Assembly (NCBI GenBank): GCA_002269645.1 | Contig: NIVC01000282.1 | Span: 1 to 64,000, forward strand | Direction of reading: 5' to 3' | DNA: 64,000 bases | Origin: Macrostomum lignano | Taxonomy: Eukaryota | Shown: one piece after another, positions 7,691-38,502 of the stretch | Numbering within the stretch: the first letter of the stretch is position 1 | Layout: every line of letters starts with the position of its first letter | Position numbers and translations under genes: made by a program | Notes under the pieces: model-generated | Told to the model about the DNA's origin: nothing | The model's input: the letters and a program-made list of their open reading frames with translations, nothing else | Database searches by the model: none

Positions 7691-8096
7691 TAGAAGTCTT
7701 ATAAGAGCTAAAGTATACTAATACTTTATTTAATTGATTATGCTGAATAAAAAATAGCAACTAAATACATGTGGCTAAAAACAAGAGTATGCCTGCATAT
7801 TTTGTTGCAAAATGACTGGAGCGCCCTTTCGCATTCCACCCAGCCGAAGATAAGGGGAGAGGGTCTGAGGGGTTTGTCTAACTGTCCTTTCTTGTCCTTT
7901 CTAAATATAGTACGCTCGTAATATGAATTATTATAATTATTAAAAACTAGTTAAAAACTAAAATTACAATTTTAGGTGCTGAAATTCTGAGCTCCCAAAA
8001 TTTCTTGAATAAGACTTTAAAAGCCTTTTTGCCTTTTCATTAGCATATTTATATTTATAAATATAATATAGAAACCTTACTAGCATCCATGCTTGG

Positions 8097-9320: not shown

Positions 9321-9480
9321 CTGCAATTGTTGCCATTGTTGATACCGTATTAATACGCTTCTAGGGAGATTTTGTGGGATGCCTAATGCACTTCAGGATT
9401 CTATGGGATTATAAACTTTGAAACTTCAGGGCGATTCTATAAAACTAACTAACACCTTCAGGGCAATACCATTTAGGGCT

Positions 9481-15420: not shown

Positions 15421-16614
15421 AGCTTTGTCTTTGAAGGTGACTTAAATAATAGTGCAATTTATATCAATTGTATGCGGGTATGCCTTGAGGCGAGGGGCTT
15501 CGCTTAGTAGGGTGGTCTGGGCACGCTCTTGCCTATTGCCTCTTATTACCAAAAATTGCAACAAATTAAACAGCAGTAGCCAATAGTAGAGCGTATTTTT
15601 TAAACTATAAAAAAGCGCTATTTAAAGTCTACGAAAACGGTATTTGTACTTTAACAATTATTCAATTCCATCCGTGAGTTTAGAAAACGTTTCTCAGAAC
15701 GTATTTTATACTTTAAAATCTCAAGAAATAACAAATAGTGGGCCGATAGAATAAAACAGCTGAGTAATAAACACATCTATAGAAGCGCCAATATCACTTA
15801 TTTTATTCTATGTGTTATCACACATATTTAAGGCTCAAAAATTTGATTGTACGTGTATGATACTGCCTGTCCGTGTAACAGTTAATCCGGCGCATATGAT
15901 GTGTCTCAACTGAGTCCAGGGTGCCAGTAGCTTGGCGCCAAGAGCAGAATATGTTTATGTCAACATATAAATATATTGTGAAACTAGTAAAATTACAGTA
16001 ACAGGGGTGCCATGCAGCACCATAGGAGTTGCGCATAGATGGAAGTAGGAGCGAGGCTGCTTCGGCAAACACTTGTGCCAAGAGCATCTCGTGTCGTTGA
16101 TTTCCGATGCCTCTGTGTAAGCTGAATACGCCCGAAAAATTTGTTTTAAGTTATTAATAGCCTAAATTGAATTCCGAACTGTAGCGAATTTTACTGGTGG
16201 GAGGCCAAGGGGTGAAATCTAAAGTTTACCCAAAAGTAATTAGCGAAACTACACTACTGTTCGTAAAAATTAAGTCTTATAAAGTATTGTCCTGCTCGAA
16301 ACATTCTTTTAATGATTATGGGGTGTTCAACAGATCTCTCTCCACTCCATTAAACAAGACTCAAATCTCAGCTTCATACATGTAGGAGCAGGTCAATTAA
16401 CTTAATTAACAGCATCTCAAGAAGTACATGTAATTCACCTTTATTTGTCCCAAAGTTATCACATATATATGTAAAATACAGTTACATTCTATGCAAAACC
16501 TCTCACTGCTGTATGATATTCTGCTACGAGCGTACAAGCCACAAGTAAGTATTATAGTTCTCTAGACGTTTATTAAAAAAGAGTTCTGTGGAAGAGTTTC
16601 TTCACTAGGGAAAA

Positions 16615-19600
16615 TCAGTCCAAAACAAAGTCGGTCTCCTTCAGCCTCATCATTGTGTCGCCCACCAGTCGAATGTCGTTCATGTCAACGACAATGGAGG
16701 CGGCGATGCGGATGAACAGCGAGTCCTCGATGTTGAGAATCAGCAGGTCCATTTTGAGCTTGTAGGCCAGGAATTTCCACATGTTGCTCTCGAATCTCGT
16801 CTCCTCGGCCTGCGATTTCAGGTTGCGGATGGGAAAGTAGAGAAGAAAGAGGAGAGGAGAGGAGAGGAGAGGATAGGAGAAGAGAAGAGAAGAGAGGAGA
16901 GGAGAGGAGAGGAGAGGAGAGGAGAGGAGAGGAGAGGAGAGGAGAGGAGAGGAGAGAAGAGGAGAGGAGAGAAGAGGAGAGGAGAGGAGAGGAGAGGAGA
17001 AGAGAGGAGAGGAGAGGAGAGGAGAGGACAGGAGAGGAGAGAAGAAAAGAGAGGAGGTCACAAACTCGACCTCTCCAAAGAAGAACTCACAAACTTCTTG
17101 ATGGCGGGCCTCTGAAGATGCTGGGGTAGGCGGATGAGGCGCATGAACGGCGCCTGCATGTCAGCCGGCAGGGGCAGCAGGTCGGTGCCCCAGAATCCGG
17201 CCAGATAGCTGCTGGCCTCATCAGCAAGGCTGCGGCAGTATTCGTAAACTCTGTCCTGATGTGCATCGGTGAAGGTAACAGAGGTATGCTTCACTCATTC
17301 AGACAGTTGTTGAGCAGAACCAATTGGCCAGCAGACACTCACCAGACCGCCGCAAATCTCGTCGATAAACTTCAAAGCTTCCGGGATGACGTAGAAGCTG
17401 CTGGTGTCCCTGGTGCCCAGGTAGGAGTACCTGTGCGGCAGCACCTCGTCATGGAGCAGCCAGGAGACAATGTCGGGTTTCATGGTGCTCACGTGAGCCT
17501 CGCTAATCCACATCAGAGCGACTGATTTCGGCAGGAAGTGCCACTTGTTGAGGTTGCCGAGGTAGAAGTCGGCGCCGATGTCCTCGATGTCCAGGTTTGG
17601 CACCTGGCCGATGGCGTGGGCCCCGTCGATGATCACCTTGATGCCCCGGTTGCGGCACAGGGCTGTGAGCTCCTTCACTGGCATCAGGCAGGCCGTGGTG
17701 CTCGTGATATGGTCTAAATAGGGGATGTCGGATAAGCGTTGCTGGGAGCCCTAGCTGCGCAGTACCTGTGTCACCCTACCTGTCCACCTGTGTCACCCCA
17801 CCTGTCCACCTGTGTCACTCTACCTGTCACCTGTGTCACCCTGCCTGTAACCTGTGTCACCCTACCTGTAACCTGTGTCACCCTGCCTGTCACCTGTGTC
17901 ACCCTGCCTGTCACATGTATCACCATACCTGTCACCTGTGTCACCCTGTCTGTCACCTGTGTCACCCTGCCTGTCACCTGTGTCACCCTACCTGTCACCT
18001 GTGTCACCCTGCCTGTCACCTGTGTCACCCTGCCTGTCACCTGTGCCACACTACCTGTAACCTGTGTCACCCTGCCTGTCAACTGTGTCACCCTGCCTGT
18101 CACCTGTGTCACCCTGCCTGTCACCTGTGTCACCCTGCCTGTCACCTGTGTCACCCTGCCTGTCACATGTATCACCATACCTGTCACCTGTGTCACCCTG
18201 TCTGTCACCTGTGTCACCCTGCCTGTCACCTGTGTCACCCTACCTGTCACCTGTGTCACCCTGCCTGTCACCTGTGTCACCCTGCCTGTCACCTGTGCCA
18301 CACTACCTGTAACCTGTGTCACCCTGCCTGTCAACTGTGTCACCCTGCCTGTCACCTGTGTCACCCTGCCTGTCACCTGTGTCACCCTGCCTGTCACCTG
18401 TGTCACCCTGCCTGTCACCTGTGTCACCCTGCCTGTCACCTGTGCCACACTACCTGTAACCTGTGTCACCCTGCCTGTCACCTGTGTCACCCTGCCTGTC
18501 ACCTGTGTCACCCTACCTGTCACCTGTAACCTGTGTCACTCTAACTGTCACCTGTGTCACCCTACCTGTCACCTGTGTCACCCTACCTGTCACCTGTGTC
18601 ACACTACTTGTCACCTGTGTCACTCTACCTGTCACCTGTCACCTGTGTCACCCTACCTGTCCCCTGTGTCATCCTACCTGTCACCTGTGTCACTCTACCT
18701 ATCACCTGTGTCACCCTAACTGTCACCTGTGTCACCCTACCTGTCACCTGTGTCACTCTAACTGTCACCTGTGTCACCCTACCTGTCACCTGTGTCACCC
18801 TAACTGTCACCTGTGTCACCCTACCTGTCACCTGTGTCACCCTAACTGTCACCTGTGTCACCCTACCTGTCACCTGGGTCACCCACCTCATCGCCTGTCC
18901 CCCAGCTACATTCCTAAAATCTCCAGTGGGGTCGCACCGAACACAGCAATTCGAACTTTCGGCCTCCTGTCCAGCTCCTGCTCGACCGCCCGCAGCACGT
19001 CCTCGCCCGACTTCAGCGGCAGTTGAAGCTTCGCTTCGGGCGCCTCCCCGGCCTCCGTGGCAGCCATCCTGACGGCGATGTAGGTCCAGGAGTTGATGAG
19101 CACCTGGGAGCCGGGCGGCTCCAGGGCCAACAGTCGGCGCAGAATGTTGGACACTCCGATGGTGACATTCTCCAGAAGGGCGCACTGCTGCGGCCGCACC
19201 CGAAGGCGCCTGGCGATGGCCTCCAGGCTGCTGTAGTTCAGATCCACCTGGCGGAGTCGAACGAACTCGTCGGCGAACGACTCGAACTCTTCGGTGAGTC
19301 TGCGGGCGGCAGATCAAAGGGAATGCTCAAGTAGGAGGTAGAGCTGTCTTATAAAATATTTGAAGCGGAAGGCTGAAGGCAGTGTCTGAAGGATCCGCTA
19401 AGGGTGTCTGTGCAGGATCCGCTAAGGGTGTCTGTGCAGGATCCGCTAAGGGTGTCTGTGCGATCCGCTAAGAGTGTTTGAGGGATCCGCTAAGGGTATT
19501 TGAGGGATCCGCTAAGGGTGTCTGTGGAATCCGCTAAGGGTGTCTGTGGGATCCGCTAAGGGTGTCTGAAGGATCCGCCAAGGCTGTCTGAGGGATCCGC

Positions 19601-20321
19601 TAAGGGTGTCTGAGGGATCCGCCAAGGCTGTCTGTGGGATCCGCTAAGGCTGTCTGTGGGATCCGCTAAGGGTGTCTGTGGGATCCGCTAAGGCTGTCTG
19701 TGGGATCCGCTAAGGGTGTCTTTGGGATCCGCTAAGGGTGTCTGAGGGATCCGCTAAGGGTGTCTGAGGGATCCGCTAAGGGTGTCTGAGGGATCCGCTA
19801 AGGGTGTCTGAGGGATCCGCTAAGGGTGTCTGAAGGATCCGCCAAGGCTGTCTGAGGGATCCGCTAAGGGTGTCTGGGGAATCCGGTAAGGGATGTCAGA
19901 AGGCCGCCACAAATAATTTTAAGTATTAGAAACGTCCTTAGGACTTTTTAGAATCTCTGAGAACTCTGAGAATTTGAGAAATCTTATCATTTCATGTATT
20001 CATTACTTCAAGGGATCAGGAATCATTTGTACCGCAGTTTGCAATCCAGAACGCTCTTCGGTGCCACCCCGAACGAGCCATTGTTCAGCATGAGGACGCC
20101 ACGGCGAGCCACGTGGGGAAAGTGCTGCTCAAGCATCGGCCTGCCGAACTCAGCGGCTTGGAGCTGGCCGGATGTTTCTAAAAATAGAATTTTGAAGGGT
20201 GGATGAGGGGCGCTAATGAGGGGCGCTAATGAGCGGCGCTAATGAAGGGTTGTAATAAGAGGGGCAGTAATATTTTACTACATTCAAACTTGTTTCACTT
20301 ACCAGCTTCAGTTTCATTCAT
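16615..20321 (-). CDS. Class-V PLP-dependent aminotransferase / C-S lyase (Egt2 hercynylcysteine-sulfoxide lyase / L-cysteine desulfhydrase / isopenicillin N epimerase-like), 6 exons (20321-20303, 20177-20033, 19299-18938, 17713-17343, 17255-17091, 16809-16615)
   Basis: [25 protein letters not shown]|[28 protein letters not shown] (PLP lysine), YLGTRDTS and FIRIAAS. All splice phases are consistent (1,2,1,0,0). Confidence 0.88.
16835..17060. repeat. (GGAGA)n pentamer microsatellite in lyase intron 5
   Basis: Visible tandem array. Confidence 0.95.
17765..18890. repeat. 21-bp minisatellite (cctgtcacctgtgtcaccctg) filling lyase intron 3
   Basis: Roughly 50 tandem copies; source of the VTCVTLP/CHLCHP pseudo-ORFs. 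Confidence 0.95.
19388..19880. repeat. 22-bp minisatellite (ggatccgctaagggtgtctgag) in lyase intron 2
   Basis: Tandem copies with BamHI-site periodicity. Confidence 0.93.
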
Positions 20322-20945: not shown

Positions 20946-21260
20946 ATAGCATAATAATATACTCGAATATTTTTGAAAATAGACAAGCAAACTTTATTAA
21001 AAATAAACAGCAAGGCACTAATTGTGTTAAGCAAAAGCCAGGATTCACGATGTACTCTAAGAAAAATTGATTGATCAGAAAAGATCTTAATGTATTGGGC
21101 ATAGTTTTTCATGCATAATTTGAATGAGAAAAAGTCAGCAGAAACGTTCTTGTCCACAATAGTAAGGTTGCAGTCGGATTCTGATCAAAACCGCGGTTCG
21201 CAAGTGGCGCTCATTGGATGAAGTCCCGGACAGGACAGAAACGGCAGGCCGTGAACGGAA

Positions 21261-21800
21261 GTGTCAGGCAGTGTCAGGCAGTGTCAGGAAGTTTCAGGCG
21301 TGTCAGGCAGTGTCAGGCAGTGTCAGGCAGTGTCAGGCGGTGTCAGGTAGTGTCAGGCAGTGTCAGGCAGTGTCAGGCAGTGTCAGGCAGTGTCAGGCAG
21401 TGTCAGGCAGTGTCAGGCAGTGTCAGGCAGTGTCAGGCAGTGTCAGGCAGTGTCAGGCAGTGTCAGGCAGTGTCAGGCAGTGTCAGGCAGTGTCAGGCAG
21501 TGTCAGGCAGTGTCAGGCAGTGTCAGGCAGTGTCAGGCAGTGTCAGGCAGTGTCAGGCAGTGTCAGGCAGTGTCAGGCAGTGTCAGGCAGTGTCAGGCAG
21601 TGTCAGGCAGTGTCAGGCAGTGTCAGGCAGTGTCAGGCAGTGTCAGGCAGTGTCAGGCAGTGTCAGGCAGTGTCAGGCAGTGTCAGGCAGTGTCAGGCAG
21701 TGTCAGGCAGTGTCAGGCAGTGTCAGGCAGTGTCAGGCAGTGTCAGGCAGTGTCAGGCAGTGTCAGGCAGTGTCAGGCAGTGTCAGGCAGTGTCAGGCAG
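21261..21800. repeat. Homogeneous decamer array (TGTCAGGCAG)n, about 54 copies, inside the last coding exon of the PCIF1-like gene
   Basis: The unit is the reverse complement of coding CACTGCCTGA; nearly invariant over about 500 bp. Confidence 0.95.
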
Positions 21801-24800
21801 TGCTCCATCCACGCAGCGCGGACGCTGTCCACATCGGTACAGGTGAAGCACTGCTTGATGACCCCGTTCCAATCAGCAATGCTGGGCAGCCGCCGGCCCA
21901 TAGCGAAGATGCTGAGCGCCATACGCGGGAGGAGTACGCTACCGTAGCAGTCCTTTGGAGTTCGAGCAAAAGTTTTTTTGTTTAGGCAGCAAATGCAGCG
22001 GGTGAGCGATTTACCAGCGACATCAGTTATTAGGATTGGAGAAGGGTTCAGAAAACAAAATAGGAACAGAGTGGAAGAGAGTGGAAGAGAGTGGGAGAGA
22101 GTGGAAGAGAGCGGAAAAGAGTGGAAGAGAGTGGGACAGAGAATGGAACAGGGAAAATAATGGAGGGGCGAGTATATCAGAGCGGAGAAAGTCGAGAACG
22201 GGATATAAGTACATACCCTCATGCAAGTATTGATCAGTTAATCAAAAGATTACTGATCAGTGATTCAATTTCAATATCTAGCATTTCGGAGCCCTATAAT
22301 GAGATTTTTACCTGCACCGTGAACTTCCTCGGCGACAGGCAAAGCTGCTGCAGTTTGTGCTTGGACTCTGCGAGCCGCTGCCAGCCCGGGGAGTCACTCC
22401 AGCACGGGAAGGTGACGAAGAACCAGCAAGCGCCGCTGGCATCTCTGGGAATAATCGAGGGGTGAAGGACTGAGATATTGGAACTCATAGTGCTAATAAT
22501 AGTGCTTGACTGTGGAGTGTGTACCTGCAGGCTTCTAGGCAGGAGTACAAAGTTCATGTGATTGAATTACGTGCTCATCGGAGACAAACAGACATATCTT
22601 AATACTGATTTACTACTGTATGTCATCCGGATGTACTAAGCATGTCATCCCGGATGTACTAAAAAAGCATGTCATCCCAGATGTACTAAGCATGTCATCC
22701 CGGGATGTACTAAGCATGCCACCCCATGATGTACTAAGCATGCCACCCCGGGATGTACTAAGCATGCCACCCCATGATGTACTAAGCATGCCACCCCGGG
22801 ATGTACTAAGCATGCCACCCCATGATGTACTAAGCATGCCACCCCGGGATGTACTAAGCATGCCACCCCGGGATGTACTAATTGCATGTAATCCTGGATG
22901 TACTAAGCATGCCACCCCGGGATGTACTAAGCATGTCATCCTGGATGTACTAAGCATGCCACCCCGGGATGTACTAAGCATGTCATCCTGGATGTACTAA
23001 GCATGCCATCCGGATGTATTCAACATTGATACCGGATGCATTCAACATCCGTTCCGGATGTACACATAGAGTATACTCAAACACGTTCAAATACCTGTTC
23101 AAATAGTCCAACACCTTGTTGGCGACTTGCAACATTAGCTCCTCGATAAAAGGTGGATTAACTGTCCAGCCTCCTGGATAGTGGCTGAAGTCCACGGCGA
23201 AGAAGTCGCCAAGGCTGCCAAACGGAGCGTCCGTGTCCGGGAACAGGCTGCAAAATGCGACGCCCGGTTTTCCTAGCAGTTTCGAATTCAAAGGCGATGC
23301 GAATCCTTCATAGCGCACGCCCATGTGTTCGTACAGTGCGTGATGCACTGTGACCGGGTCGCCCCACTGCAGGCTGCCTGTGCCCAGAGTCTCGTACCGT
23401 AACAGCATCCGGGCCGTAGCTTTTAAGCCGAAATTTCTTACCAAAAAGCTGATTCTAGGACAGCATGGACTGGCGTAGCCATCAGACAAACTTAAAGAGT
23501 TTTGGTGACCTGCAGAGAGGTTGAGGTTTGAAAATCAATCAATAAATCAAATCAACTGCCGAACTAAAACAGTCTCAGAAAATATATTAAGTACACAGTG
23601 TGCTTTAACTCACAGCCAATAAGCAGCTGTCCTTCAACCTCCGATTCCTTGCACTCGCTGTCATCTCCGAGGTCACCATTCTGTTGGCGTCGCCGTTCCA
23701 AGAAGACCACACTGACGCCGCCTGCATTGCCTGGCTGCCGATCTGGTGATTGGATCAGCTGGTCGATTGTCTGCTCAAACTGAGACACCGCGTCTACCAG
23801 GACCCGAGCGATTCGCTGCGCGTTGCTTCGGGACGCGCTGAACTTCTTTTCCACGCACTCATCGATCTGTCGGGGAAAAAAGTTTTCTTGCTCAATGGAG
23901 ACAGCCAACTCGGAGAGTAGGCAATTAAGATTGGCCTCTGAGCTGACCTCTAAGCATACAAACATACGAGCGTATACGTATGCTACCAGGCTTGTTCCAC
24001 AGACAGCGATTGGAATATAGGATTCAATACCAAGTATAAATTTGATAAAAACTGCAACCAATCGGCCACGGCTCAGCCTGACGCAGCCGCAGCAATTTTC
24101 CATAGACAGCCACCGCTAGCGGCAACCAATTTGGTAAAAACTGCGAGCTATTTTGCCAGCTTGAAGATAGCAGCTCAATAGCATAACAATAACGATAAAG
24201 AATGTTAACAATACATGCACGAAGTCAGAACATTATGTCCTCAGCATTCAAGCACCGATTGAAGTACGTCTGGGAATGGTTGATCCAGCGCAGGCACTTG
24301 AGAGGCGTGAGAGGCAGTAGGTTGACCTTCGACGAATTGAACAATGGTGTCCACCATAGCCTCCGTCAGCGCCATCCTCTTCACTCCTCCTTTTGGCAGA
24401 GTGCCAACTCTACCAGTTCGTTCATACGTGGTCACGATGTTCCTCACTGTCGGTTTCTTCATCCCCATCATTCTGCCAAGCTCTCCCCAGTCGTCGCCAC
24501 TCCTGTACGCTCTCACGATTCGCTCTCGATCCAGCTGACTTATCTTTTGGTACGGCCCACGATTCGCCATCAGAGCAGCTGCTATCTTCAAGCTGGCAAA
24601 ATAGCTCGCAGTTTTTACCAAATTGGTTGCCGCTAGCGGTGGCTGTCTATGGAAAATTCTATGTCTATGGTCAGGCTGAGCCGTGGCCAATTGGTTGCAG
24701 TTTTTATCAAATAGAACGTAAAAAGGTATATTAAGTAGTATTGTATCATTTGGAGGGGTTTTTAGAGGCATACCAATCAAGCCTGATTGTTGCACGATTC

Positions 24801-26436
24801 AAATGTCTATGGCCGAAACAAACGCTAAGAGGCCAGATATTCAAAGCTATATTTAGCACTGCATAACGTATAACGCAAGCAATAAAAGCAACATTAGAAG
24901 CAACAGCAGTTAAGGCAGTATGCCTCAGTTACCTATTTCTTATGCCTCATGGCTTATTATTAATGTGTACGTGAAATTGGCAGTTGTAGAAAGTACCAGA
25001 AATCGCAGAAGCAAGCGTCTGCTGCGTCTCCAAACTGCGCCCGACGACGGCTATTGGCTGCTCAGTGCATGTGCAGAAGACCTATTGGCACACCAGTAGA
25101 AGCCTCGTAGATCATGGTTCGTTTCAATGGAGCGGCAGATGAGTGGAGTATAAAACGCAGCTAAACCATATTTACGCTCGTAGCTTCAGCTTCTGGCTTT
25201 AAAGACTTTCAAAACCCACTTTTGACCATAGATATTTCTTTTGACCATAGACGTTTCTGACAAGAAACGTATTATTTTTAATGTCGTTGCTCCAATCACT
25301 GTACCACGATATATATTTCTCGTGCATTAAATGGCTTCAGCCAATACGTGATCACGAGCATTTAAGCACGCTTTTACATATTTATATCGTGTTACAATTG
25401 ATATAACACGATTTAAATGTGTAAAAGCGTGTTTAAACGGCTTGTGATCGCGTATTGGCTAAAGTAATTTAATGCATGAGCAATATGGTATCGTGATTTT
25501 AATGCTGCTAAATACGCGTGCACTCGTTGCCTGGACATCCATCTTTTTTCCATATACTAAAAATGAAAATCTTGTATGTGCGCAATCGATTATCTCCCAA
25601 AAGGCTTGACCGATTTTCTTCGAACTTGCACCATTCGATCAGAAATTTTTCCGTGACGGTACATGCATCGTGGCTAAGAAATATGAGCACTAAAAACCGA
25701 CTTTTGAACCCCTCAACGTTGAAATTGAATAGCGATTTGTCAGTTTTGATAGCTCCTATTTCAAAATTGAACGGAAAAATGTGTAGAACGCTCGTTTTCA
25801 TCGATTTGCTAAAGGCCGGCTAAATTACTAAATGAACCAGCGATACGACAACTACATTCTTTACCAGCCCCAGCTCATTTCTAGGAAAATCCAGTGTGCA
25901 CGTAGCGTCCTTTGTACCTTGGGTTCATGGGTCTTGTTTGTATGGAGCACAATATGCAACTTTAGGAGTCAAGGGTCATTGGGGACTGGCTGAAATGCCG
26001 TGGCTTAAGGGGGTTGCTCAGATTTTTTGCTAATTGCTAGGAAACATACAACAAAACAAAAATGGCAGTAAAAATACGCATGACTAATACAGACCAACTT
26101 TTGGCTAGCGAACGTTTCAGTGCCCAATAGACCTGGAAAAATTGGTAGTGGCAGCGAACGAGCTCCACAACCTTCTTCGCTGCGACTCTCCAGTTGAAAG
26201 GACAGGAGCCAGCGATCAAAGATGTTCCTGGCCTCGGCCTGGTCTTTCTCTCGAGTCCGATGCATTGGTCCGTCGCCCACTTGAACAAACACCCGACAAA
26301 GTCGCCGAGTCAGGTGCCAGAGGTTCAACTCGCGGAGCAGCAGCTCGGATGCGGCGATTCGCTCTACCTCGACCAGTTGAAGTTGATCGGCACTGGCAGC
26401 TTTGCTGTTTTGTAACTCAACCGCAGCTTGAGACAT
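21773..26436 (-). CDS. PCIF1: PCIF1/CAPAM-like mRNA cap-adjacent adenosine N6-methyltransferase lacking a WW domain, 5 exons (26436-26095, 23866-23614, 23509-23095, 22444-22312, 21952-21773)
   Basis: Exon 1 has EVERIAASELLLRELNL..NIFDRWLL..PLP (cf. EVELLRSQL..SFNRWML..DPLLP). Exon 3 has MLLRYETLGTGSLQWG..EGFASPLNS..FCSLFPDTDAPFGSLGDFF..WTVNPPFIEELM (NPPF motif IV). Exon 4 has WFFVTFPCW. Phases 0,1,2,0 are all consistent with GT-AG junctions. Orthology versus paralogy is unresolved. Confidence 0.85.
22617..23060. repeat. 24-bp minisatellite (catgccaccccgggatgtactaag) in PCIF1-like intron 3
   Basis: Period 24 (22684 to 22708). Confidence 0.92.
24040..24712 (-). mobile_element. Internally deleted IS630-Tc1-mariner-type transposon enclosed by long bipartite inverted repeats, in PCIF1-like intron 1
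   Basis: From ATG 24570: MANRGPYQKISQLDRERIVRAYRSG..LGRMMGMKKPTVRNIVTTYERTGRV..KGG (paired-like HTH), joined in a shifted frame to LKCLRWINHSQTYFNRCLNAEDI (transposase C-terminus); no DDE core. IR arms are 24094-24175/24577-24658 (perfect) and 24040-24082/24670-24712. Confidence 0.75.
25305..25495. repeat. 191-bp imperfect foldback palindrome (MITE-like)
   Basis: cacgat..tgcattaaat..agccaatacg..cacgcttttaca..atcgtgtta mirrors taacacgat..tgtaaaagcgtg..cgtattggct..atttaatgca..atcgtg about a centre near 25400. Confidence 0.8.
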
Positions 26437-27114
26437 TTTCAATGAGTCAACTTTTCCTGCGCATTCAATTCTTGTCCAGCACAGATTGCTAATCAATATT
26501 ATTTATAGCTCTCCGAGGGGGGCTCGTCTAGCCAAAAAGCGTAGTACATATGCGCGAGCTATAATCACTAAAATAATTCCAGTCTAGGCGCAAAGCTCAT
26601 GTGGCTAACCAGTAAATGGGCGGAATGACTGTTTGTATTCTCAGTGCTCATTTTTTTAGCTGAAAGCACTCTGGCTGTACGCGGGGTTGGCAAGAATATA
26701 CTTGCCTTAGGAGAGGAAGGGAGAGAGAAGGGACAGACGAGACTGCGAGCTCATGGAGCACCGCTTCCTTCCGAAAGAGAGGAGAGCTTACTGTGTTACA
26801 CAAGTACATGTAGTCAAGGCTCGTAGCGCACACTCTCATCTGCAGTTTGTGTCGACATTTCTTTGAAAAAAAGCAGCAAAAGTAACCTACTATAATAACA
26901 TCTGCTTGCGTTTGTCTTGTTTAATGGCTCGTTCAGACCGTTTTTAAATTCGGCCAACGTTTTGCCACTGCGCGGTTTGTCATTTGTTCAGTTCATCGAG
27001 TCGCCTGGTTTTATGGCTCATTCGATGGGGCATTAACGAGCCTTTGTTTAATGAACAGCAGTCTTAACACAATTACAAATGAACACTACTAGGCACCCTC
27101 TTATATTGTATCAT

Positions 27115-27280
27115 CTGGGATCGGGGATCTGGGATCGGGGATCTGGGATCGGGGATCTGGGATCGGGGATCTGGGATCAGGGATCTGGGATCGGGGATCT
27201 GGGATCGGGGATCTGGGATCGGGGATCTGGGATCGGGGATCTGGGATCAGGGATCTGGGATCGGGGATCTGGGATCGGGG
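27115..27280. repeat. 14-bp minisatellite (ggatctgggatcgg), inverted counterpart of 20765-20945
   Basis: Tandem array followed by about 90 bp homologous to the reverse complement of 20645-20735. Confidence 0.9.
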
Positions 27281-27374
27281 AAAAAATCTCTTTGACTTGT
27301 ACCGCAGAAGTTAATGGCGTTGGCTGTTTAGGTTTCAACCGCGGATTTTCCCGCAAATTCAGGCCAATCTCGCA

Positions 27375-28172
27375 GACACAGGTGACAGGTATGGTGACGC
27401 AGGTGACAGTTAGGGTGACACAGGTGACAGGTGACAGTTAGAGTGACACAGGTGACACAAGTGACACGTAGAGTGACATAAGTGACAGGCAGGGTGACAC
27501 AGGTGACAGGTAGGGTGACACAGGTGACAGGTTGGGTGACACAAGTGACAGGTAGGGTGACACAGGTGACAGGTAGGGTGACACAGGTGACAGGTAGGGT
27601 GACACAGGTGACAGGCAGGGTGACACAAGTGACAGGTAGGGTGACACAGGTGACAGGCAGGGTGACACAGGTGACAGACAGGGTGACACAGGTGACAGAC
27701 AGGGTGACACAGGTGACAGGTATGGTGACACAGGTGACAGGCAGGGTGACGCAGGTGACAGACAGGGTGACACAGGTGACAGTTAGGGTGACACAGGTGA
27801 CAGGTATGGTGACACAGGTGACAGGCGGGGTGACGCAGGTGACAGGCAGGGTGACACAGGTGACAGACAGGGTGACACAGGTGACAGGTATGGTGACACA
27901 GGTGACAGGCAGGGTGACACAGGTGACAGGCAGGGTGACGCAGGGGACAGGTATGGTGACACAGGTGACAGGCAGGGTGACACAAGTGACAGGTAGGGTG
28001 ACACAGGTGACAGGCAGGGTGACACAAGTGACAGGCGGGGTGACACAGGTGACAGGTATGGTGACACAGGTGACAGGTATGGTGACACAGGTGACAGGCA
28101 GAGTGACACAGGTGACAGGCAGGGTGACACAGGTGACAGGCAGGGTGACACAGGTGACAGGCAGGGTGACAG
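27375..28172. repeat. 21-bp minisatellite (ggtgacaggcagggtgacaca), inverted counterpart of 17765-18890
   Basis: Same unit, opposite strand. Confidence 0.95.
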
Positions 28173-28224
28173 ATGCTGCGCAGCTAGGGCTCCCAGCAAC
28201 GCTTATCCGACATCCCCTATTTAG

Positions 28225-29610
28225 ACCATATCACGAGCACCACGGCCTGCCTGATGCCAGTGAAGGAGCTCACAGCCCTGTGCCGCAGTCGGGGCATCAA
28301 GGTGATCATCGACGGGGCCCACGCCATCGGCCAGGTGCCAAACCTGGACATCGAGGACATCGGCGCCGACTTCTACCTCGGCAACCTCAAAAAGTGGCAC
28401 TTCCTGCCGAAATCAGTCGCTCTGATGTGGATTGGCGAGGCTCACGTGAGCACCATGAAACCCGACATTGTCTCCTGGCTGCTCCATGACGAGGTGCTGC
28501 CGCACAGGTACTCCTACCTGGGCACCAGGGACACCAGCAGCTTCTACGTCATCCCGGAAGCTTTGAAGTTTATCGACGAGATTTGCGGCGGTCTGGTGAG
28601 TGTCTGCTGGCCAATTGGGGCTGCTCAACAACTGTCTGAATGAGTGAAGCATACCTCTGTTACCTTCACCGATGCACATCAGGACAGAGTTTACGAATAC
28701 TGCCGCAGCCTTGCTGATGAGGCCAGCAGCTATCTGGCCGGATTCTGGGGCACCGACCTTCTGCCCCTGCCGGCTGACATGCAGGCGCCGTTCATGCGCC
28801 TCATTCGCCTGCCCCAGCATCTTCAGAGGCCCGCCATCAAGAAGTTTGTGAGTTTGTGAGTTCTTCTTTGAAGAGGTCGAGTTTGTGACCTCCTCTCTCC
28901 TCTCCTCTCCTCTCCTCTCCTCTCCTCTCCTCTCCTCTCCTCTCCTCTCCTCTCCTCTCCTCTCCTCTCCTCTCCTCTCCTCTCCTCTCCTCTCCTCTCC
29001 TCTCCTCTCCTCTCCTCTCCTCTCCTCTCCTCTCCTCTCCTCTCCTCTCTCTCCTCTCCTCTCCTCTCTTTCCCTCTCCTCTCCTCTCTTTCCCTCTCCT
29101 CTCCTCTCCTTTCCTCTCCTCTCCTCTCCTCTCCTCTCCTCTCCTCTCCTCTCCTCTGCTCTCCTCTCCTCTCCTCTCCTCTCCTCTCCTCTCCTCTCCT
29201 CTCCTCTCCTCTCCTCTCCTCTCCTCTCCTCTCCTCTCGTCTCCTCTCCTCTCCTCTCCTCTCCTCTCCTCTTCTCTCCTCTCATCTCCTCTCCTCTCCT
29301 CTCCTCTCCTCTCCTCTCCTCTCCTCTCCTCTCCTCTCCTCTCCTTTCCTCCCTTTCCCTCTCCTCTCCTCTCCTCTTTCTCCTCTAGTCTCCCATCCGC
29401 AACCTGAAATCGCAGGCCGAGGAGACGAGATTCGAGAGCAACATGTGGAAATTCCTGGCCTACAAGCTCAAAATGGACCTGCTGATTCTCAACATCGAGG
29501 ACTCGCTGTTCATCCGCATCGCCGCCTCCATTGTCGTTGACATGAACGACATTCGACTGGTGGGCGACACAATGATGAGGCTGAAGGAGACCGACTTTGT
29601 TTTGGACTGA
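28225..29610 (+). pseudogene. 5'-truncated inverted duplicate of the PLP lyase gene (exons 4-6 only: 28225-28595, 28683-28847, 29416-29610)
   Basis: Exon lengths equal those of copy A (371/165/195 nt), with about 7 substitutions by eye. Far-upstream sequence (27280-27370) is joined directly to the intron-3 array, so exons 1-3 are absent. Confidence 0.8.
28885..29390. repeat. (CTCTC)n pentamer microsatellite in the duplicate's intron 5
   Basis: About 500 bp here versus about 220 bp in copy A. Confidence 0.95.
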
Positions 29611-30944
29611 TTTTCCCTAGTGAAGAAACTCTTCTAGAGAACTCTAAAGAACTTTAAAGAAGGTACTAAAGGTACGAATAACATCATGCAGCAGTGAGAG
29701 ATTTTAATCAGAATTTTAACACACCTAATCATTTAAAGAATGTTTTGTACAGGAAAATTCACCATAAGCATTCATTTTTACTAAAAGTAGCGTAGTTTGA
29801 CTTTTACTTTCGGGTAGCTTTCGACCCTTCCCCCCCCGCAGTGAGACTCGCTACATTTCGGAATTCAATTTAGGCAATTAATAACTAAACAAGTGGAGCA
29901 ACATTTTCGGACGGATTCAGCTTACACAGAGGCATTGGATTTCAACGGCAAAGTCAACGACACAGGATACTCGTGCTAATTGCTATGACACGAGTGTAAT
30001 TTGCCTGGCACCAGCTTCTTATGCGCGACTCCTGCTCCAATGCACTGGGGGGGGGGCAAAGCACCATCTTTGTCAACAATCTATTAATTCTGTTTATAAA
30101 TCCAAATAAGTTCTTTAAGACCGCGTCGTCAACGAAAAAGTCCTCGGATTGCACTCGGTTAAACTTGAATTTATTTGTTCTAATTATTGCTATGGAAATT
30201 GCGCAGTTGACTGAGATTTGGCATGTAAACCGGTGGAGGCTCAGGGCCTTTAATCTGGCTTTTATTTCTTTTCGCCTTACGTTTCTTATTGCCTACCGGT
30301 AGACACCCCCCAGCTGGTAGGGCGCCGGGCCATGGAGTACTGGGATACTAGAATCTGGTTAGGAAGCATCAATATGGCAAGGAATTTGAAGGCCATCGAG
30401 TTTTAAAGCTTAATCTATAAGACTATCTCCAACTCCAATCCAGTCGGTATGTTTAGCACGCCATGACCGGAGGAGCCGAAGGGAGTGTGGGCTCGGTGGC
30501 CACTGGGTTCGGCTGTCCCAGAAACTGGGCCGCCGCCCGCTGCACGCAGCGCCCCGCCAGAGAGGGAGTTGGAAACGCAGGAGATTAAAGACTGCTACAC
30601 AACAAAGTAATTTTTTCGCACAGCGCACTTGCAATCGCGATAGTTCAACTTTCCAGCCAAGCCACTCCGCCCCGTTTTTCTTCTCTCTAACTTTTCTTGG
30701 ACTAGTGAAAAACAGCACGCTGAAAAATCATCTTGAAATTTCAGCGGCACATGAGTAAGCGCTACTTAAGCATTGGCCCGCGATGCCAGGGGTTACCGGG
30801 TGCTTAGCGGCTTTGTTGGAATTTGAAATTCGAAACAAATATTAAGGTTCTTTCCACTTTCGAATTTTGCACGATTCAGCCTCATCCTGGTATAGGAAAT
30901 GCCTGGCAACCACCAATCCTAGCACATGTTTGAATCTTGGTGTC

Positions 30945-32790
30945 TGCCTTAGTGTCCTAATGTCTGTGACAGGCTGTCTTAATGTCCTAATGTCTGTCAC
31001 AGGCTGTCTTAGTGTCCTAATGTCTGTGACAGGCTGTCTTAATGTCCTAATGTCTGTGACAGGCTGTCTTAGTGTCCTAATGTCTGTGACAGGCTGTCTT
31101 AGTGTCCTAATGTCTGTGACAGGCTGTCTTAGTGTCTTAATGTCTGTGACAGGCTGTCTTAATGTCCTAATGTCTGTCACAGGCTGTCTTAGTGTCCTAA
31201 TGTCTGTCACAGGCTGTCTTAATGTCCTAACGTCTATGACAGGCTGTCTTAATGTCCTAATGTCTGTGACAGGCTGTCTTTGTGTCCTAATGTCTGTGAC
31301 AGGCTGTCTTAGTGTCCTAATGTCTGTCACAGGCTGTCTTAATGTCCTAACGTCTATGACAGGCTGTCTTAATGTCCTAATGTCTGTGACAGGCTGTCTT
31401 TGTGTCCTAATGTCTGTGACAGGCTGTCTTAGTGTCCTAATGTCTGTCACAGGCTGTCTTAATGTCCTAACGTCTATGACAGGCTGTCTTAATGTCCTAA
31501 TGTCTGTGACAGGCTGTCTTTGTGTCCTAATGTCTGTGACAGGCTGTCTTAGTGTCCTAATGTCTGTGACAGGCTGTCTTAGTGTCCTAATGTCTGTGAC
31601 AGGCTGTCTTAATGTCCTAATGTCTGTGACAGGCTGTCTTAATGTCCTAATGTCTGTGACAGGCTGTCTTAGTGTCCTAATGTCTGTCACAGGCTGTCTT
31701 AATGTCCTAACGTCTATGACAGGCTGTCTTAATGTCCTAATGTCTGTGACAGGCTGTCTTTGTGTCCTAATGTCTGTGACAGGCTGTCTTAGTGTCCTAA
31801 TGTCTGTGACAGGCTGTCTTAGTGTCCTAATGTCTGTGACAGGCTGTCTTAATGTCCTAATGTCTGTGACAGGCTGTCTTAGTGTCCTAATGTCTGTGAC
31901 AGGCTGTCTTAGTGTCCTAATGTCTGTGACAGGCTGTCTTAGTGTCCTAATGTCTGTGACAGGCTGTCTTAATGTCCTAATGTCTGTCACAGGCTGTCTT
32001 AGTGTCCTAATGTCTGTCACAGGCTGTCTTAATGTCCTAACGTCTATGACAGGCTGTCTTAATGTCCTAATGTCTGTGACAGGCTGTCTTTGTGTCCTAA
32101 TGTCTGTGACAGGCTGTCTTAGTGTCCTAATGTCTGTCACAGGCTGTCTTAATGTCCTAACGTCTATGACAGGCTGTCTTAATGTCCTAATGTCTGTGAC
32201 AGGCTGTCTTTGTGTCCTAATGTCTGTGACAGGCTGTCTTAGTGTCCTAATGTCTGTGACAGGCTGTCTTAGTGTCCTAATGTCTGTGACAGGCTGTCTT
32301 AATGTCCTAATGTCTGTGACAGGCTGTCTTAATGTCCTAATGTCTGTGACAGGCTGTCTTAGTGTCCTAATGTCTGTCACAGGCTGTCTTAATGTCCTAA
32401 CGTCTATGACAGGCTGTCTTAATGTCCTAATGTCTGTGACAGGCTGTCTTAGTGTCCTAATGTCTGTCACAGGCTGTCTTAATGTCCTAACGTCTATGAC
32501 AGGCTGTCTTAATGTCCTAATGTCTGTGACAGGCTGTCTTAATGTCCTAATGTCTGTGACAGGCTGTCTTAGTGTCCTAATGTCTGTGACAGGCTGTCTT
32601 AGTGTACTAATGTCTGTGACAGGCTGTCTTAGTGTCCTAATGTCTGTGACAGGCTGTCTTAGTGTCCTAATGTCTGTGACAGGCTGTCTTAGTGTCCTAA
32701 TGTCTGTGACAGGCTGTCTTAGTGTCCTAATGTCTGTGACAGGCTGTCTTAATGTCCTAATGTCTGTCATTCTGTTTCTCTTTGTGTCCT
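30945..32790. repeat. 30-bp minisatellite (aatgtctgtgacaggctgtcttagtgtcct), about 61 copies, with 120-bp higher-order period
   Basis: Exact 30-bp register; the variant cgtctatgac recurs at 31231, 31351 and 31471. Confidence 0.95.
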
Positions 32791-32899
32791 AATGTGTGTC
32801 TTAGTGTTTGTGCTAGTGTTGTCTGTTTGTTTTTTGTCTGTCTGTTTTTTAGTGTCTTAGTGTCTTAGTGTCTTAGTGTCTTAGTGTCTTAGTGTCTTA

Positions 32900-33375
<476 letters not shown>

Positions 33376-35975: not shown

Positions 35976-36609
35976 TCTTCAGAACTCGATTAAATTGATT
36001 TTAATGCGCTTGATTCACAGCATTTACACTATACAGTTTAGCCTCTAGTTGTCTGTGTGGCTCCGGGTTCCTTTTCTAGCACTCCTTGACTCCTTGTCTA
36101 GACGGGATTGCGGAATTTAAGGGTCATCTAATAGTAGCACAGGCTACAACTATGGGATCCAAGCGGGCACTAGGCCAATAAAATCCCCCCCCGGACTTAG
36201 CCTGTCGAAGACCCTGGGGGTTGGGGGAGAGTAGCGCCCAAGCCGGCAATCTGCACAATAGAAGTAATAATTTAGCAGTAGCAGTTAGTACGGGGTTCTC
36301 AACTTTCTACAGTCAAGTAAAGCGATGAGTGATTTGGTCTCGCTAGTGTTTTTTTTCGCTCGCTAAATTGATAATTTATTGCTTTTAATAGTGTGCACAC
36401 ACTGGGCTGGCGTGTCAGTTGCCTGTGCTGCCGAGGGCTGCTGCAATAACACTATGAATATGATGCAGGATGCCTGATTAAGAATTAGAATTTAGAGAAT
36501 TTATTGCGAATTGTGCGATAGTTCAGAGAATATGAGATATGAGACAGAACATGTGATAGAGTAGAGAGTATGAAATATATTGACTTTGAGATAGAGTGTA
36601 AGATTAGAA

Positions 36610-37945: not shown

Positions 37946-38502
37946 AACAGAAGAAGAGCAAAGTGAAATCGGGAGCAGAAGAAGATAAGCAACAGAAAAA
38001 GAAAGTGGGGAAGGAACAACAGACGCCCCTTGCCGGCTTTTGATCTCCCCCCTCTCTCTCCCGCACCGAACCAGACAAGCCGCAAACAAAACTGCCGGTC
38101 GCACCCAGGCCGAACTTCAAAAGGCTCGACCCCAAGCCAGGCCTCAGACAGGGTCTGGCGGACACATGCACTCAAAGGATGCCGCGAGGGCTTCAACATT
38201 GGAGACAAGTAAACCGAGGCATGGGTTTATTTAAACAAGAAAATCATCAACCAGCAGTTATGAGCTATCTATTCTGTTCCTTTCTTTCAATTCTTTCGCA
38301 CGGGCTTGTAATTTTTTTTTTGGGGGGGGGGGGTTGAGCAATCGTGGGAACGGTTTAAAGGAGCCTTTGTTATATTGCTGAGTCAATTGTGGCTACAAGC
38401 AGCGCTTGGGAACTGTTTGTATAGTGCGTGAAATTAGTGAGAGATTCGGGAAAGTCCCTCTAGCCCCCTGATCATACTTCTTTTCCCTTGAACGTAAGGT
38501 GT

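What the first reader, a model, noticed from the sequence alone, without database searches (positions are those of the whole stretch)
21773..26436. WW-less PCIF1/CAPAM-like cap methyltransferase with an intact catalytic motif
Five separate ORF fragments splice in phase into a protein of about 440 aa with the PCIF1 helical region (FDRWLL) and a complete catalytic core (FASPLN, FCSLFPDTD, FGSLG, NPPF). No WW domain is visible upstream as far as the duplication boundary. Canonical PCIF1 uses its WW domain to bind phospho-Ser5 Pol II CTD. The LQWG and WTVNPPF variants differ from animal PCIF1 and recall protist or large-DNA-virus homologues (recollection only). In a trans-splicing animal, a CTD-independent enzyme could methylate SL RNA/snRNA or recapped mRNA 5' ends, which would be an undescribed cap-modification branch. 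Horizontal acquisition followed by intron gain is also possible.
Basis: partly seen in the sequence, partly recalled or inferred. Interest (0 to 1): 0.75.

Follow-up and report, generated by a model that had tools for sequence, protein, structure and literature searches.

The report
Giant-virus-type PCIF1-like methyltransferase in a flatworm
This is a real, intact, five-exon gene of the flatworm Macrostomum lignano for an RNA-cap-type adenosine methyltransferase that lacks the usual RNA-polymerase-docking (WW) domain. It belongs to a small flatworm gene family whose closest relatives outside a small clade of Macrostomum paralogues and a few unidentified sequences are giant-virus enzymes rather than the normal animal PCIF1.

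Summary
On the minus strand, five GT-AG exons (26436-26095, 23866-23614, 23509-23095, 22444-22312, 21952-21773) encode a 440-aa protein. It is identical to GenBank PAA86364.1 (BOX15_Mlig016061g1, Macrostomum lignano), a model from a transcriptome-based annotation. It matches Pfam PF12237 (E=1e-31) and keeps EGFASPLN, FCSLFPDTD, FGSLG and NPPF. An AlphaFold model (pLDDT 84) matches only the CAPAM/PCIF1 crystal structures strongly.

No WW domain occurs in any frame of the 64-kb window or of a homeologous locus, and all paralogues also lack one. The gene is under purifying selection against its homeologue (dN/dS 0.24).

It is not the canonical animal PCIF1 orthologue. It belongs to a large subfamily marked by (D/E)RWL, QWG and GGWxVNPPF. 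Nearly all relatives with a known or inferable source are from giant viruses: Bodo saltans virus, CroV, pithoviruses, a fish poxvirus and giant-virus metagenome genomes. Some of these are fused to a CMTR1-type cap 2'-O-methyltransferase.

M. lignano has at least five paralogue groups. Two are intronless, and the others have introns at unshared positions, which fits horizontal acquisition followed by intron gain.

Its activity and substrate are inferred, not shown. The spliced-leader idea gets no support, because the published leader starts with C. Whether a canonical WW-PCIF1 also exists in this genome could not be determined.

The parts
26095..26436 (-). Exon 1 (ATG at 26436-26434; aa 1-114). 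N-terminal helical region including FDRWLLSFQ and LPIFP. Donor is AAGTTG|GTCTGT.
   Evidence: Junction taken from the transcript-derived homeologue P0173. The product is identical to PAA86364.1. This region is also conserved in paralogues and in giant-virus homologues.
23614..23866 (-). Exon 2 (IDECVEKKF...LLIG). Second part of the helical region plus a low-confidence acidic loop.
   Evidence: Acceptor is TTTTTTCCCCGACAG|ATCGAT. AF2 pLDDT is below 50 for residues 172-191.
23095..23509 (-). Exon 3. Methyltransferase core with LQWGDP, YEGFASPLN, FCSLFPDTD, FGSLG and GGWTVNPPF (N316-F319 of the 440-aa protein).
   Evidence: Pfam PF12237 E=1.4e-25 on this exon alone. Aligns to CAPAM. Invariant family columns are retained.
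22312..22444 (-). Exon 4 (RDASGACWFFVTFPCWSDSPGW...FTVQ). Strands of the Rossmann fold after the catalytic loop.
   Evidence: Junctions confirmed by P0017, P0173 and P0328.
21773..21952 (-). Exon 5 (DCYG...WMEHCLTLPDTA, stop TGA at 21775-21773). C-terminal helices.
   Evidence: The C-terminal W..C motif is shared with paralogues.
26500..26507 (-). TATAAATA about 65 nt upstream of the ATG. Candidate core promoter, consensus-level evidence only.
   Evidence: Read directly from the sequence. No gene is called in the 10 kb upstream.
24040..24729 (-). Copy-specific insertion in intron 1, absent from homeologue L029. It overlaps most of ORF 24241-24795, which carries a Tc1/mariner (Sleeping Beauty-type) HTH remnant.
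   Evidence: Pfam HTH_SB and HTH_28. The segment is absent from homeologue L029.
22629..23008 (.). 24-bp minisatellite (about 16 copies) in intron 3, just downstream of the exon 3 donor.
   Evidence: TRF.
21260..21802 (.). 10-bp minisatellite (54 copies; CTGCCTGACA on the coding strand). It contains the stop codon and the start of the 3' flank.
   Evidence: TRF. Same arrangement in the homeologue.
27375..29645 (+). Inverted, 5'-truncated copy of the aminotransferase class V gene. It bounds the upstream intergenic region (26437-27374).
   Evidence: Self-BLAST, 92-95% to 16580-18579. The copy is full-length in the homeologue.
16615..20321 (-). Downstream neighbour: aminotransferase class V gene (418 aa). 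Synteny is conserved in the homeologue.
   Evidence: PF00266.

Best explanation
This is a functional, expressed host gene of Macrostomum lignano (BOX15_Mlig016061g1). It encodes a 440-aa SAM-dependent adenosine-N6 methyltransferase of the PCIF1/CAPAM superfamily, made only of a reduced N-terminal helical domain and the catalytic Rossmann domain.

It has no WW domain, so it cannot dock on the Ser5-phosphorylated Pol II CTD the way canonical PCIF1 does. It must find its substrate by direct RNA and cap recognition.

The most likely reaction (inferred, not shown) is N6-methylation of a 2'-O-methylated adenosine next to the 5' cap (Am to m6Am), as in CAPAM.

In evolutionary terms it is not the animal PCIF1 orthologue. 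It is one member of a Macrostomum multigene family within the short, WW-less PCIF1-like subfamily typical of giant viruses. The family was most likely acquired horizontally as an intronless gene, then duplicated, with introns gained independently in some copies.
For: Gene reality and expression:
- The five-exon GT-AG model is identical to PAA86364.1.
- That annotation is built from RNA-seq and a transcriptome assembly (PMC5730564).
- Three homeologous copies are all intact at 440 aa.
- Window against homeologue L029: 17 synonymous and 14 non-synonymous differences, no indels, dN/dS 0.24, binomial p=1.5e-4.

Enzyme class:
- PF12237 E=1e-31.
- NPPF and the EGFASPLN, FPDTD and FGSxG positions sit at invariant or nearly invariant family columns.
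- The AF2 model has pLDDT 83.8 and pTM 0.83.
- Its six top PDB matches are all CAPAM (E about 1e-12, TM 0.42-0.51, 430-530 aligned columns spanning the helical and methyltransferase parts). The next hit has E=4e-3.
- The CAPAM WW domain is dispensable for catalysis; the helical and methyltransferase domains form the cap pocket (PMC8287941).

No WW domain. All paralogues start with Met shortly before the helical region.

Cap-directed function:
- Subfamily members are fused to FtsJ domains in 6 of 49 long members. They are also found with the viral poly(A) polymerase catalytic subunit, XRN, RNase III and RNA polymerase subunits.
- The one FtsJ fusion examined, P0061, is a CMTR1-type cap 2'-O-methyltransferase (4N48, E=7e-22).

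Viral affinity:
- The top 150 of 2285 homologues almost all carry G(G/N)Wx(V/I)NPP(F/Y).
- 25 IMG/VR loci lie on 6-957 kb viral contigs, including giant-virus MAGs, with up to 51% identity.
- BFVD structural matches are Bodo saltans virus, pithoviruses, CroV, TetV-1, Hokovirus and Salmon gill poxvirus.

Acquisition and intron gain:
- Mlig030305 and Mlig015920 are intronless.
- Intron positions differ between Mlig016061 (after codons 114, 198.3, 336.7, 381), Mlig008908 (103, 268.7) and Mlig000263 (309.7).
- The Macrostomum paralogues plus four unidentified sequences form one clade, 84% NJ bootstrap. Two of those four look like mRNA-derived contigs.
Against: - No biochemical or cap-mass-spectrometry data exist for this protein or for any member of the viral-type subfamily. 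Activity and substrate are inferred.
- The helical domain is about 100 residues shorter than in CAPAM, and the global superposition is loose (rmsd 14-20 A). I could not check conservation of the m7G-contacting residues.
- RNA-seq reads cannot be assigned among three copies that are 97-98% identical, so transcription of this particular copy is not proven.
- The deep branching of my tree (NJ, 183 columns) is unresolved. The direction of transfer (virus to animal, or eukaryote to virus) is therefore not established.
- Many 'viral-type' relatives come from metagenomes of unknown origin and could include protists.
Confidence: 0.62

Rival explanations
1. It is an active PCIF1-like N6-adenosine methyltransferase, but its substrate is not the cap-adjacent Am of ordinary mRNAs. 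Candidates are SL RNA or snRNA 5' ends, TMG-capped or recapped RNAs, internal adenosines, or DNA.
For: - Without a WW domain there is no co-transcriptional coupling to Pol II.
- M. lignano trans-splices about 30% of its genes (PMC8629364).
- The helical domain that helps define substrate choice in CAPAM is much reduced.
- The wider clade derives from bacterial DNA methyltransferases (PMC4738411).
Against: - The published SL starts with C (CGGTCTC...), so +1 adenosine methylation of SL-capped RNAs is not expected.
- Fusions with a CMTR1-type 2'-O-methyltransferase and other mRNA enzymes in the same subfamily point to mRNA caps.
- The only strong structural matches are cap-specific CAPAM structures.
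Confidence: 0.22
2. It is a non-functional relic: an endogenised giant-virus gene or a decaying duplicate in a repeat-rich region, annotated only because an ORF survives.
For: - The locus is surrounded by minisatellites.
- It has a transposon remnant in intron 1, and its stop codon lies in a minisatellite.
- It sits between inverted duplicates of another gene.
- One paralogue (Mlig015920) has GPPF instead of NPPF.
- ML2-assembly models of related copies look frameshifted (P0001).
Against: - Four spliceosomal introns have clean GT-AG borders, preserved in the homeologue.
- dN/dS is 0.24 with no indels.
- All catalytic and SAM-binding positions are intact.
- The gene model is transcript-derived.
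- No other viral genes lie nearby; the neighbours are ordinary host genes.
Confidence: 0.07
3. It is the ordinary single PCIF1 orthologue of the flatworm, with a WW-encoding 5' exon missed because it lies far upstream or was cut off by the inverted duplication.
For: - Canonical PCIF1 is 'usually' WW-fused (PMC4738411).
- The region upstream of the gene is rearranged.
Against: - No WW-like sequence occurs in any frame of 64 kb or in the homeologous 24.5 kb.
- In the homeologue the upstream neighbour is a complete, divergently oriented aminotransferase copy about 1 kb from the ATG.
- Five paralogue groups all lack a WW domain.
- The sequence is nearer to viral-type proteins than to canonical PCIF1: mean distance 1.32 against 1.58, and all top 150 hits are non-canonical.
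Confidence: 0.03
4. It is the PCIF1-like methyltransferase domain of a DIRS1-type tyrosine-recombinase retrotransposon.
For: DIRS1 polyproteins carry a PCIF1-derived methyltransferase domain (PMC4738411). The window holds transposon debris, including an RT-like ORF at 6966-7760.
Against: - Pfam finds only PF12237 in the protein.
- No RT, RNase H or tyrosine-recombinase ORF adjoins the gene.
- DIRS1 methyltransferase domains are reported as catalytically degenerate, whereas this one is intact.
- The gene has introns and syntenic homeologues.
Confidence: 0.02

Closest known systems
Vertebrate PCIF1/CAPAM (cap-specific mRNA (2'-O-methyladenosine-N6-)-methyltransferase; PDB 6IRV-6IS0)
   Same: - Same Pfam family (PF12237).
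- Same catalytic NPPF loop and SAM-site motifs (ExFASPxN, FPDxD, FGSxG).
- Same order of a helical region followed by a Rossmann domain.
- CAPAM structures are the only strong structural matches.
   Different: - No WW domain and no long linker.
- The helical region is about 100 residues shorter.
- Only 16-18% identity over the structural alignments.
- Signature variants (D/E)RWL, QWG and GGWxVNPPF replace LQG and GSFEANPPF.
- It is not the orthologue and clusters with viral-type sequences.
Short PCIF1-like proteins of Nucleocytoviricota (for example Bodo saltans virus A0A2H4UTM5, CroV E3T4I2, Pithovirus LCPAC101 A0A481Z4I6, Tetraselmis virus 1, Hokovirus, Salmon gill poxvirus A0A0H4XWM9, giant-virus MAGs)
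   Same: - Similar size (about 315-480 aa).
- No WW domain was found: none in the 49 long metagenomic members scanned with Pfam or among the top 150 hits by motif scan. The named viral proteins were not scanned individually.
- Same motif variants, and homology extends into the N-terminal helical region.
- Up to 51% identity in the core.
   Different: - This gene sits in an animal chromosome with four spliceosomal introns, homeologues and paralogues.
- Its neighbours are host genes.
- Viral genes are intronless and are often fused to, or adjacent to, CMTR1-type methyltransferase, GT8 or helicase genes.
- None of the viral proteins is biochemically characterised, as far as my searches show.
Drosophila Pcif1 (catalytically dead, WW-containing)
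   Same: A non-vertebrate member of the PF12237 family whose role differs from that of vertebrate PCIF1 (PMC10158991 and PMC9479742).
   Different: The opposite combination. The fly protein keeps the WW domain and CTD binding but has lost catalysis (NPPH). The flatworm protein keeps NPPF but has no WW domain.
DIRS1 retrotransposon methyltransferase domain
   Same: A PCIF1-clade methyltransferase domain without a WW domain (PMC4738411).
   Different: That domain is embedded in a polyprotein with RT, RNase H and a tyrosine recombinase, and is catalytically degenerate. Neither is true here.

Membership tests
PCIF1/CAPAM superfamily (Pfam PF12237) | Significant match to the PF12237 methyltransferase profile | tested here: met
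   E=1e-31, 110 bits against a gathering score of 31.1, residues 244-392 of the first (455-aa) model.
PCIF1/CAPAM superfamily (Pfam PF12237) | Catalytic NPPF loop and SAM-site motifs (ExFASPxN, FPDxD, FGSxG) | tested here: met
   YEGFASPLN, FCSLFPDTD, FGSLG and N316-P-P-F319 are present. They coincide with invariant or nearly invariant family columns and align to CAPAM.
PCIF1/CAPAM superfamily (Pfam PF12237) | CAPAM-like fold: helical domain packed against a Rossmann methyltransferase domain | tested here: met
   The AF2 model has pLDDT 83.8. The six best PDB matches are all CAPAM (E about 1e-12, TM 0.42-0.51) and the next hit has E=4e-3. Caveat: the helical domain is reduced and the rmsd is high.
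Canonical PCIF1 (Pol II-associated cap m6Am writer) | N-terminal WW domain that binds the Ser5-phosphorylated Pol II CTD | tested here: not met
   No PF00397 match in the protein. No WW pattern or WW homology in six frames of the window or of the homeologous locus; the positive control was detected.
Canonical PCIF1 (Pol II-associated cap m6Am writer) | Orthology with animal PCIF1 (groups with canonical sequences) | tested here: not met
   All top 150 homologues are of the viral type. Distances to canonical sequences are larger than to viral-type ones. The Macrostomum clade is separate. The NJ tree is weak at deep nodes.
Canonical PCIF1 (Pol II-associated cap m6Am writer) | m7G-cap-dependent N6-methylation of cap-adjacent Am | not testable with these tools
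   Only indirect support: CMTR1-type fusions in the subfamily. The m7G-contact residues were not mapped.
Giant-virus-type short PCIF1-like subfamily | Signature motifs (D/E)RW(L/I), QWG and G(G/N)Wx(V/I)NPP(F/Y); length about 300-480 aa; no WW domain | tested here: met
   The protein has FDRWLL, LQWG and GGWTVNPPF and is 440 aa long.
Giant-virus-type short PCIF1-like subfamily | Closest sequence and structure relatives are encoded by Nucleocytoviricota | tested here: met
   IMG/VR and giant-virus MAG loci, up to 51% identity. BFVD matches to named giant viruses. Virus-like gene context of P0024, L002 and P0061.
Giant-virus-type short PCIF1-like subfamily | Encoded in a viral genome (intronless, dense viral gene context) | tested here: not met
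   Host scaffold, four introns, and host neighbours with conserved synteny in the homeologue.
DIRS1 retrotransposon methyltransferase domain | Embedded in or adjacent to RT, RNase H and tyrosine-recombinase coding sequence; degenerate catalytic residues | tested here: not met
   Only PF12237 in the protein. No such ORFs flank it. The catalytic motif is intact.

The most novel reading that the evidence does not exclude
A flatworm lineage captured a giant-virus cap-modifying enzyme and expanded it into a multigene family: at least five paralogue groups, one of them a tandem triplet, each present in several homeologous copies. This would give the animal a Pol II-independent, possibly cytoplasmic or post-transcriptional, m6Am (or related) writer system. 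Such a system could act on RNAs that canonical PCIF1 cannot reach, or could replace PCIF1 if the canonical gene has been lost.
Probability: 0.3. Interest if true: 0.7.

Novelty: new variant of a known kind. Interest (0 to 1): 0.5.

Why it matters
m6Am at the mRNA cap is so far known as the product of one enzyme type, WW-containing PCIF1, recruited co-transcriptionally by the Pol II CTD. Its distribution among invertebrates is patchy: absent in C. elegans, catalytically dead in Drosophila.

An animal with several intact, selected, WW-less PCIF1-like genes of giant-virus type would show two things. Cap-adjacent adenosine methylation can be uncoupled from Pol II in a metazoan. And viral RNA-processing enzymes can be domesticated and expanded in animal genomes.

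M. lignano has RNAi and transgenesis, so the question can be tested directly. The same experiments would give the first functional handle on the large, uncharacterised giant-virus PCIF1-like subfamily, including its CMTR1 fusions.

Tried and rejected
1. My first exon 1/2 junction (26133|23949, 455 aa) was in phase. It was rejected because it put a 28-residue insert where no relative has one. The transcript-derived homeologue uses 26095|23866, and that model reproduces PAA86364.1 exactly.

2. WW search: a regex scan, Pfam on the protein, and phmmer with the verified 2JX8 WW domain all found nothing.

3. Search for a canonical WW-PCIF1 in M. lignano with a zebrafish CAPAM core fragment. The tool returned only short fragments (289 aa or less). 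None of the 120 listed rows that carry a source name is from Macrostomum; most rows are unnamed and 81 further hits were not listed. Even full-length vertebrate PCIF1 was not listed, so the negative is uninformative.

4. Phage collection tblastn: no match, as expected because giant viruses are not in that collection.

5. Literature: no paper mentions these Mlig gene IDs, PCIF1 in flatworms, or characterised giant-virus PCIF1-like proteins.

6. Pfam over all 148 homologues exceeded the size limit. I scanned the 49 long ones instead.

7. A Biopython NJ bootstrap timed out and was replaced by a numpy NJ.

8. The DIRS1 origin, pseudogene or viral-relic, and missed-WW-exon readings were considered and rejected; see the rival explanations.

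Full report
**What is there**

The finding's coordinates, 21773-26436 on the minus strand, hold a genuine protein-coding gene. ORF listing and direct reading of the strand show five open segments joined by GT-AG introns.

My first model (455 aa) used a donor at 26133 and an acceptor at 23949. It put a 28-residue insert where no relative has one. A database protein from Macrostomum lignano, P0173 (BOX15_Mlig021227g1), showed the real junction: donor AAGTTG|GTCTGT at 26095 and acceptor CCCCGACAG|ATCGAT at 23866.

The revised exons are 26436-26095, 23866-23614, 23509-23095, 22444-22312 and 21952-21773, giving 440 aa. This product is 100% identical to GenBank PAA86364.1 (UniProt A0A267GLR6, BOX15_Mlig016061g1). 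That protein is encoded at positions 21773-26436 of scaffold NIVC01000282.1 of assembly GCA_002269645.1. The window is therefore the first 64 kb of that scaffold.

The GenBank annotation of this assembly was built from RNA-seq and a transcriptome assembly, with ORFs called by TransDecoder (PMC5730564). The exon structure therefore rests on transcripts. However, reads cannot be assigned among the three near-identical copies: Mlig016061, Mlig021227 and Mlig007261, all 440 aa.

**Is it a PCIF1-like enzyme?**

- The protein matches Pfam PF12237 at E=1e-31, 110 bits against a cut-off of 31.
- Its only significant PDB sequence matches are human and zebrafish CAPAM/PCIF1.
- It keeps YEGFASPLN, FCSLFPDTD, FGSLG and GGWTVNPPF. 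These fall on the invariant or nearly invariant columns of alignments of 148 and 45 relatives.
- An AlphaFold2 model built on a 45-sequence alignment is confident: mean pLDDT 83.8, pTM 0.83. One disordered acidic loop, residues 172-191, is the exception.
- Foldseek against the PDB returns the six CAPAM entries as the top hits (E about 1e-12, TM 0.42-0.51). Alignments of 430-530 columns cover both the helical and the methyltransferase parts. The next hit, a METTL16 complex, has E=4e-3.
- The helical part is about 100 residues shorter than in CAPAM and the global rmsd is high. The architecture is therefore shared but reduced.

**Is it really WW-less?**

Pfam finds only PF12237. A WW pattern scan of all six frames of the window finds nothing credible.

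I verified that my recalled human PCIF1 WW sequence is identical to PDB 2JX8. I then searched it with phmmer, filters off, against every stop-to-stop segment of 12 aa or more in the window and in the 24.5-kb homeologous locus L029. The best E-value was 2.8. A Pin1-type control sequence, written from memory, scored 7e-9.

The unique upstream sequence runs only from 26437 to 27374. It is followed by an inverted, 5'-truncated copy of the aminotransferase class V gene that also lies downstream of the locus. In the homeologue that inverted copy is complete and lies head-to-head about 1 kb from the ATG, and no gene is annotated in the 10 kb upstream. A TATAAATA lies about 65 nt before the ATG.

All five M. 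lignano paralogue groups also lack a WW domain and start with Met just before the helical region. These are Mlig016061/021227/007261, Mlig000263, Mlig008908, Mlig030305/031925 and Mlig015920.

**Is it functional?**

Compared with the homeologue, whose exon model reproduces P0173 exactly, the CDS has 17 synonymous and 14 non-synonymous differences. There are no indels or stop codons. dN/dS is 0.24, and the excess of synonymous changes has binomial p=1.5e-4. Synteny with the aminotransferase gene is conserved.

The locus is nonetheless messy:
- A 690-bp insertion in intron 1 (24040-24729), absent from the homeologue, overlaps an ORF (24241-24795) with a Sleeping-Beauty-type HTH remnant.
- A 24-bp minisatellite sits in intron 3.
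- The stop codon lies inside a 54-copy 10-bp minisatellite.

None of these disrupts the reading frame.

**What family does it belong to?**

A full HMMER scan of 1.84 billion representative proteins found 2285 homologues. The top 150 are short proteins (mostly 300-480 aa) or fusions. Nearly all carry G(G/N)Wx(V/I)NPP(F/Y) rather than the canonical GSFEANPPF.

Among 49 longer members the fusion partners are:
- FtsJ (6 members), glycosyltransferase family 8 (5) and helicase (5);
- single cases of the viral poly(A) polymerase catalytic subunit, XRN, RNase III and RNA polymerase subunits;
- never a WW domain among the 25 families listed.

The FtsJ part of one fusion, P0061, is a CMTR1-type cap 2'-O-methyltransferase (4N48, E=7e-22). 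It lies on a densely packed, virus-like contig.

IMG/VR holds 25 related loci on viral contigs of 6-957 kb, several of them named giant-virus MAGs. Core identity reaches 51%, and in some loci homology extends into the N-terminal helical region, to residues 18-31 of the query. Gene neighbourhoods of P0024 and L002 are typical of giant viruses.

Foldseek against predicted viral structures returns Bodo saltans virus, three pithoviruses, CroV, Tetraselmis virus 1, Hokovirus and Salmon gill poxvirus proteins of 315-480 aa, with one of 1040 aa.

**Origin**

In an NJ tree of 192 methyltransferase cores, the six Macrostomum paralogues form one clade with four unidentified sequences (84% of 200 bootstraps). 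These are P0018, P0019, P0174 and P0021. The contigs behind P0018 and P0019 look like single-gene mRNAs; no contig was available for the other two. P0018 pairs with Mlig008908 (97.5%), so the family diversified before that split. Deep nodes are unresolved.

Mlig030305 and Mlig015920 are intronless. The intron positions of the others are not shared:
- Mlig016061: after codons 114, 198.3, 336.7 and 381.
- Mlig008908: after codons 103 and 268.7.
- Mlig000263: after codon 309.7.

The nearest pair lies three codons apart. This pattern fits an intronless ancestor, either a horizontal transfer from a giant virus or a retrogene, followed by duplication and independent intron gain. It does not prove the direction of transfer.

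**Mechanism**

*Shown:* an intact, selected gene that is transcript-annotated, has a CAPAM-like fold and catalytic site, and has no WW domain.

*Inferred:* SAM-dependent N6-methylation of the cap-adjacent 2'-O-methyladenosine. In CAPAM the WW domain is dispensable for catalysis, and the helical and methyltransferase domains form the cap pocket (PMC8287941). In the viral-type subfamily the enzyme is repeatedly fused to a CMTR1-type methyltransferase, which makes the Am substrate.

Without a WW domain, targeting must be independent of the CTD.

The published 35-nt SL begins with C. Ordinary A-initiated, non-trans-spliced mRNAs are the simpler candidates.

**Not settled**

- Whether M. lignano also has a canonical WW-PCIF1. 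The one search I could run was uninformative.
- Which of the three copies is transcribed.
- Whether the m7G pocket residues are conserved.
- The identity of the organisms behind the closest non-Macrostomum relatives.

**Novelty**

The gene is already in GenBank and UniProt as a hypothetical 'PCIF1 WW domain-containing protein'; that name comes from the Pfam family, not from an actual WW domain. WW-less PCIF1-like proteins are annotated in many giant viruses.

I found no publication on these flatworm genes, on PCIF1 in flatworms, or on the biochemistry of the viral-type subfamily.

I rate it a new variant of a known kind: moderately interesting and directly testable in a tractable animal.

Noticed in passing
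window 16580-18579 and 27375-29645; L029 2834-8967: The PCIF1-like gene lies between two inverted copies (92-95% identical) of an aminotransferase class V gene. The upstream copy is 5'-truncated in this window but complete in the homeologous scaffold, so a roughly 3.4-kb deletion distinguishes the two homeologues.
   Followed up: partly
window 24040-24729 (ORF 24241-24795, minus strand): A copy-specific 690-bp insertion in intron 1 overlaps an ORF with a Tc1/mariner (Sleeping Beauty-type) HTH remnant. An older UniProt model (A0A1I8JIN4, P0168) wrongly fuses this ORF to exon 2.
   Followed up: partly
window 21260-21802: The stop codon and the last residues (…CLTLPDTA*) are encoded by the first units of a 54-copy 10-bp minisatellite. 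In this frame every second unit of the repeat gives a stop. The homeologue has the same arrangement.
   Followed up: partly
L033 3001-9499 (Mlig000263, scaffold NIVC01002568.1): Three tandem copies of a paralogous unit of about 420 aa are annotated as one 1283-aa fused ORF. Each unit's last exon runs in frame into the next unit's first exon. The M. lignano SL ends in ATG, so this could be a polycistron resolved by trans-splicing into three separate mRNAs. This was not tested.
   Followed up: no
P0020 / L034 (Mlig015920): An intronless paralogue has GPPF instead of NPPF and GGESGMC instead of QWGDP. It is a candidate catalytically inactive family member. Mlig030305 shares the GGES variant but keeps NPPF.
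   Followed up: no
P0061 / L035; P0036, P0045, P0060; L001 8892-10999: In virus-like relatives the PCIF1-like domain is fused to a CMTR1-type cap 2'-O-methyltransferase, or fused or adjacent to a glycosyltransferase family 8 (glycogenin-like) domain. The GT8 association recurs in five proteins and is unexplained.
   Followed up: partly
window 30944-33373, 36589-37947, 50118-about 51100, 61110-63496 and others: The window is exceptionally rich in long minisatellite arrays with periods of 10-45 bp. These create many spurious long ORFs on both strands.
   Followed up: no
window 767-5221 (minus strand); 6966-7760 (minus strand); 8799-9326 (minus strand): Three further features: an uninterrupted 1484-aa ORF (a large host gene or exon, not characterised), a reverse-transcriptase-like fragment, and by eye a succinate-dehydrogenase-subunit-like ORF. 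No giant-virus hallmark genes were seen.
   Followed up: no
window about 26457-26462 (minus strand): A GCGCAG acceptor-like site lies 21 nt upstream of the ATG. If the SL were spliced there, the SL's own ATG would be out of frame and hit a stop after five codons, so the genomic ATG would still be used. This is pure sequence reading.
   Followed up: no
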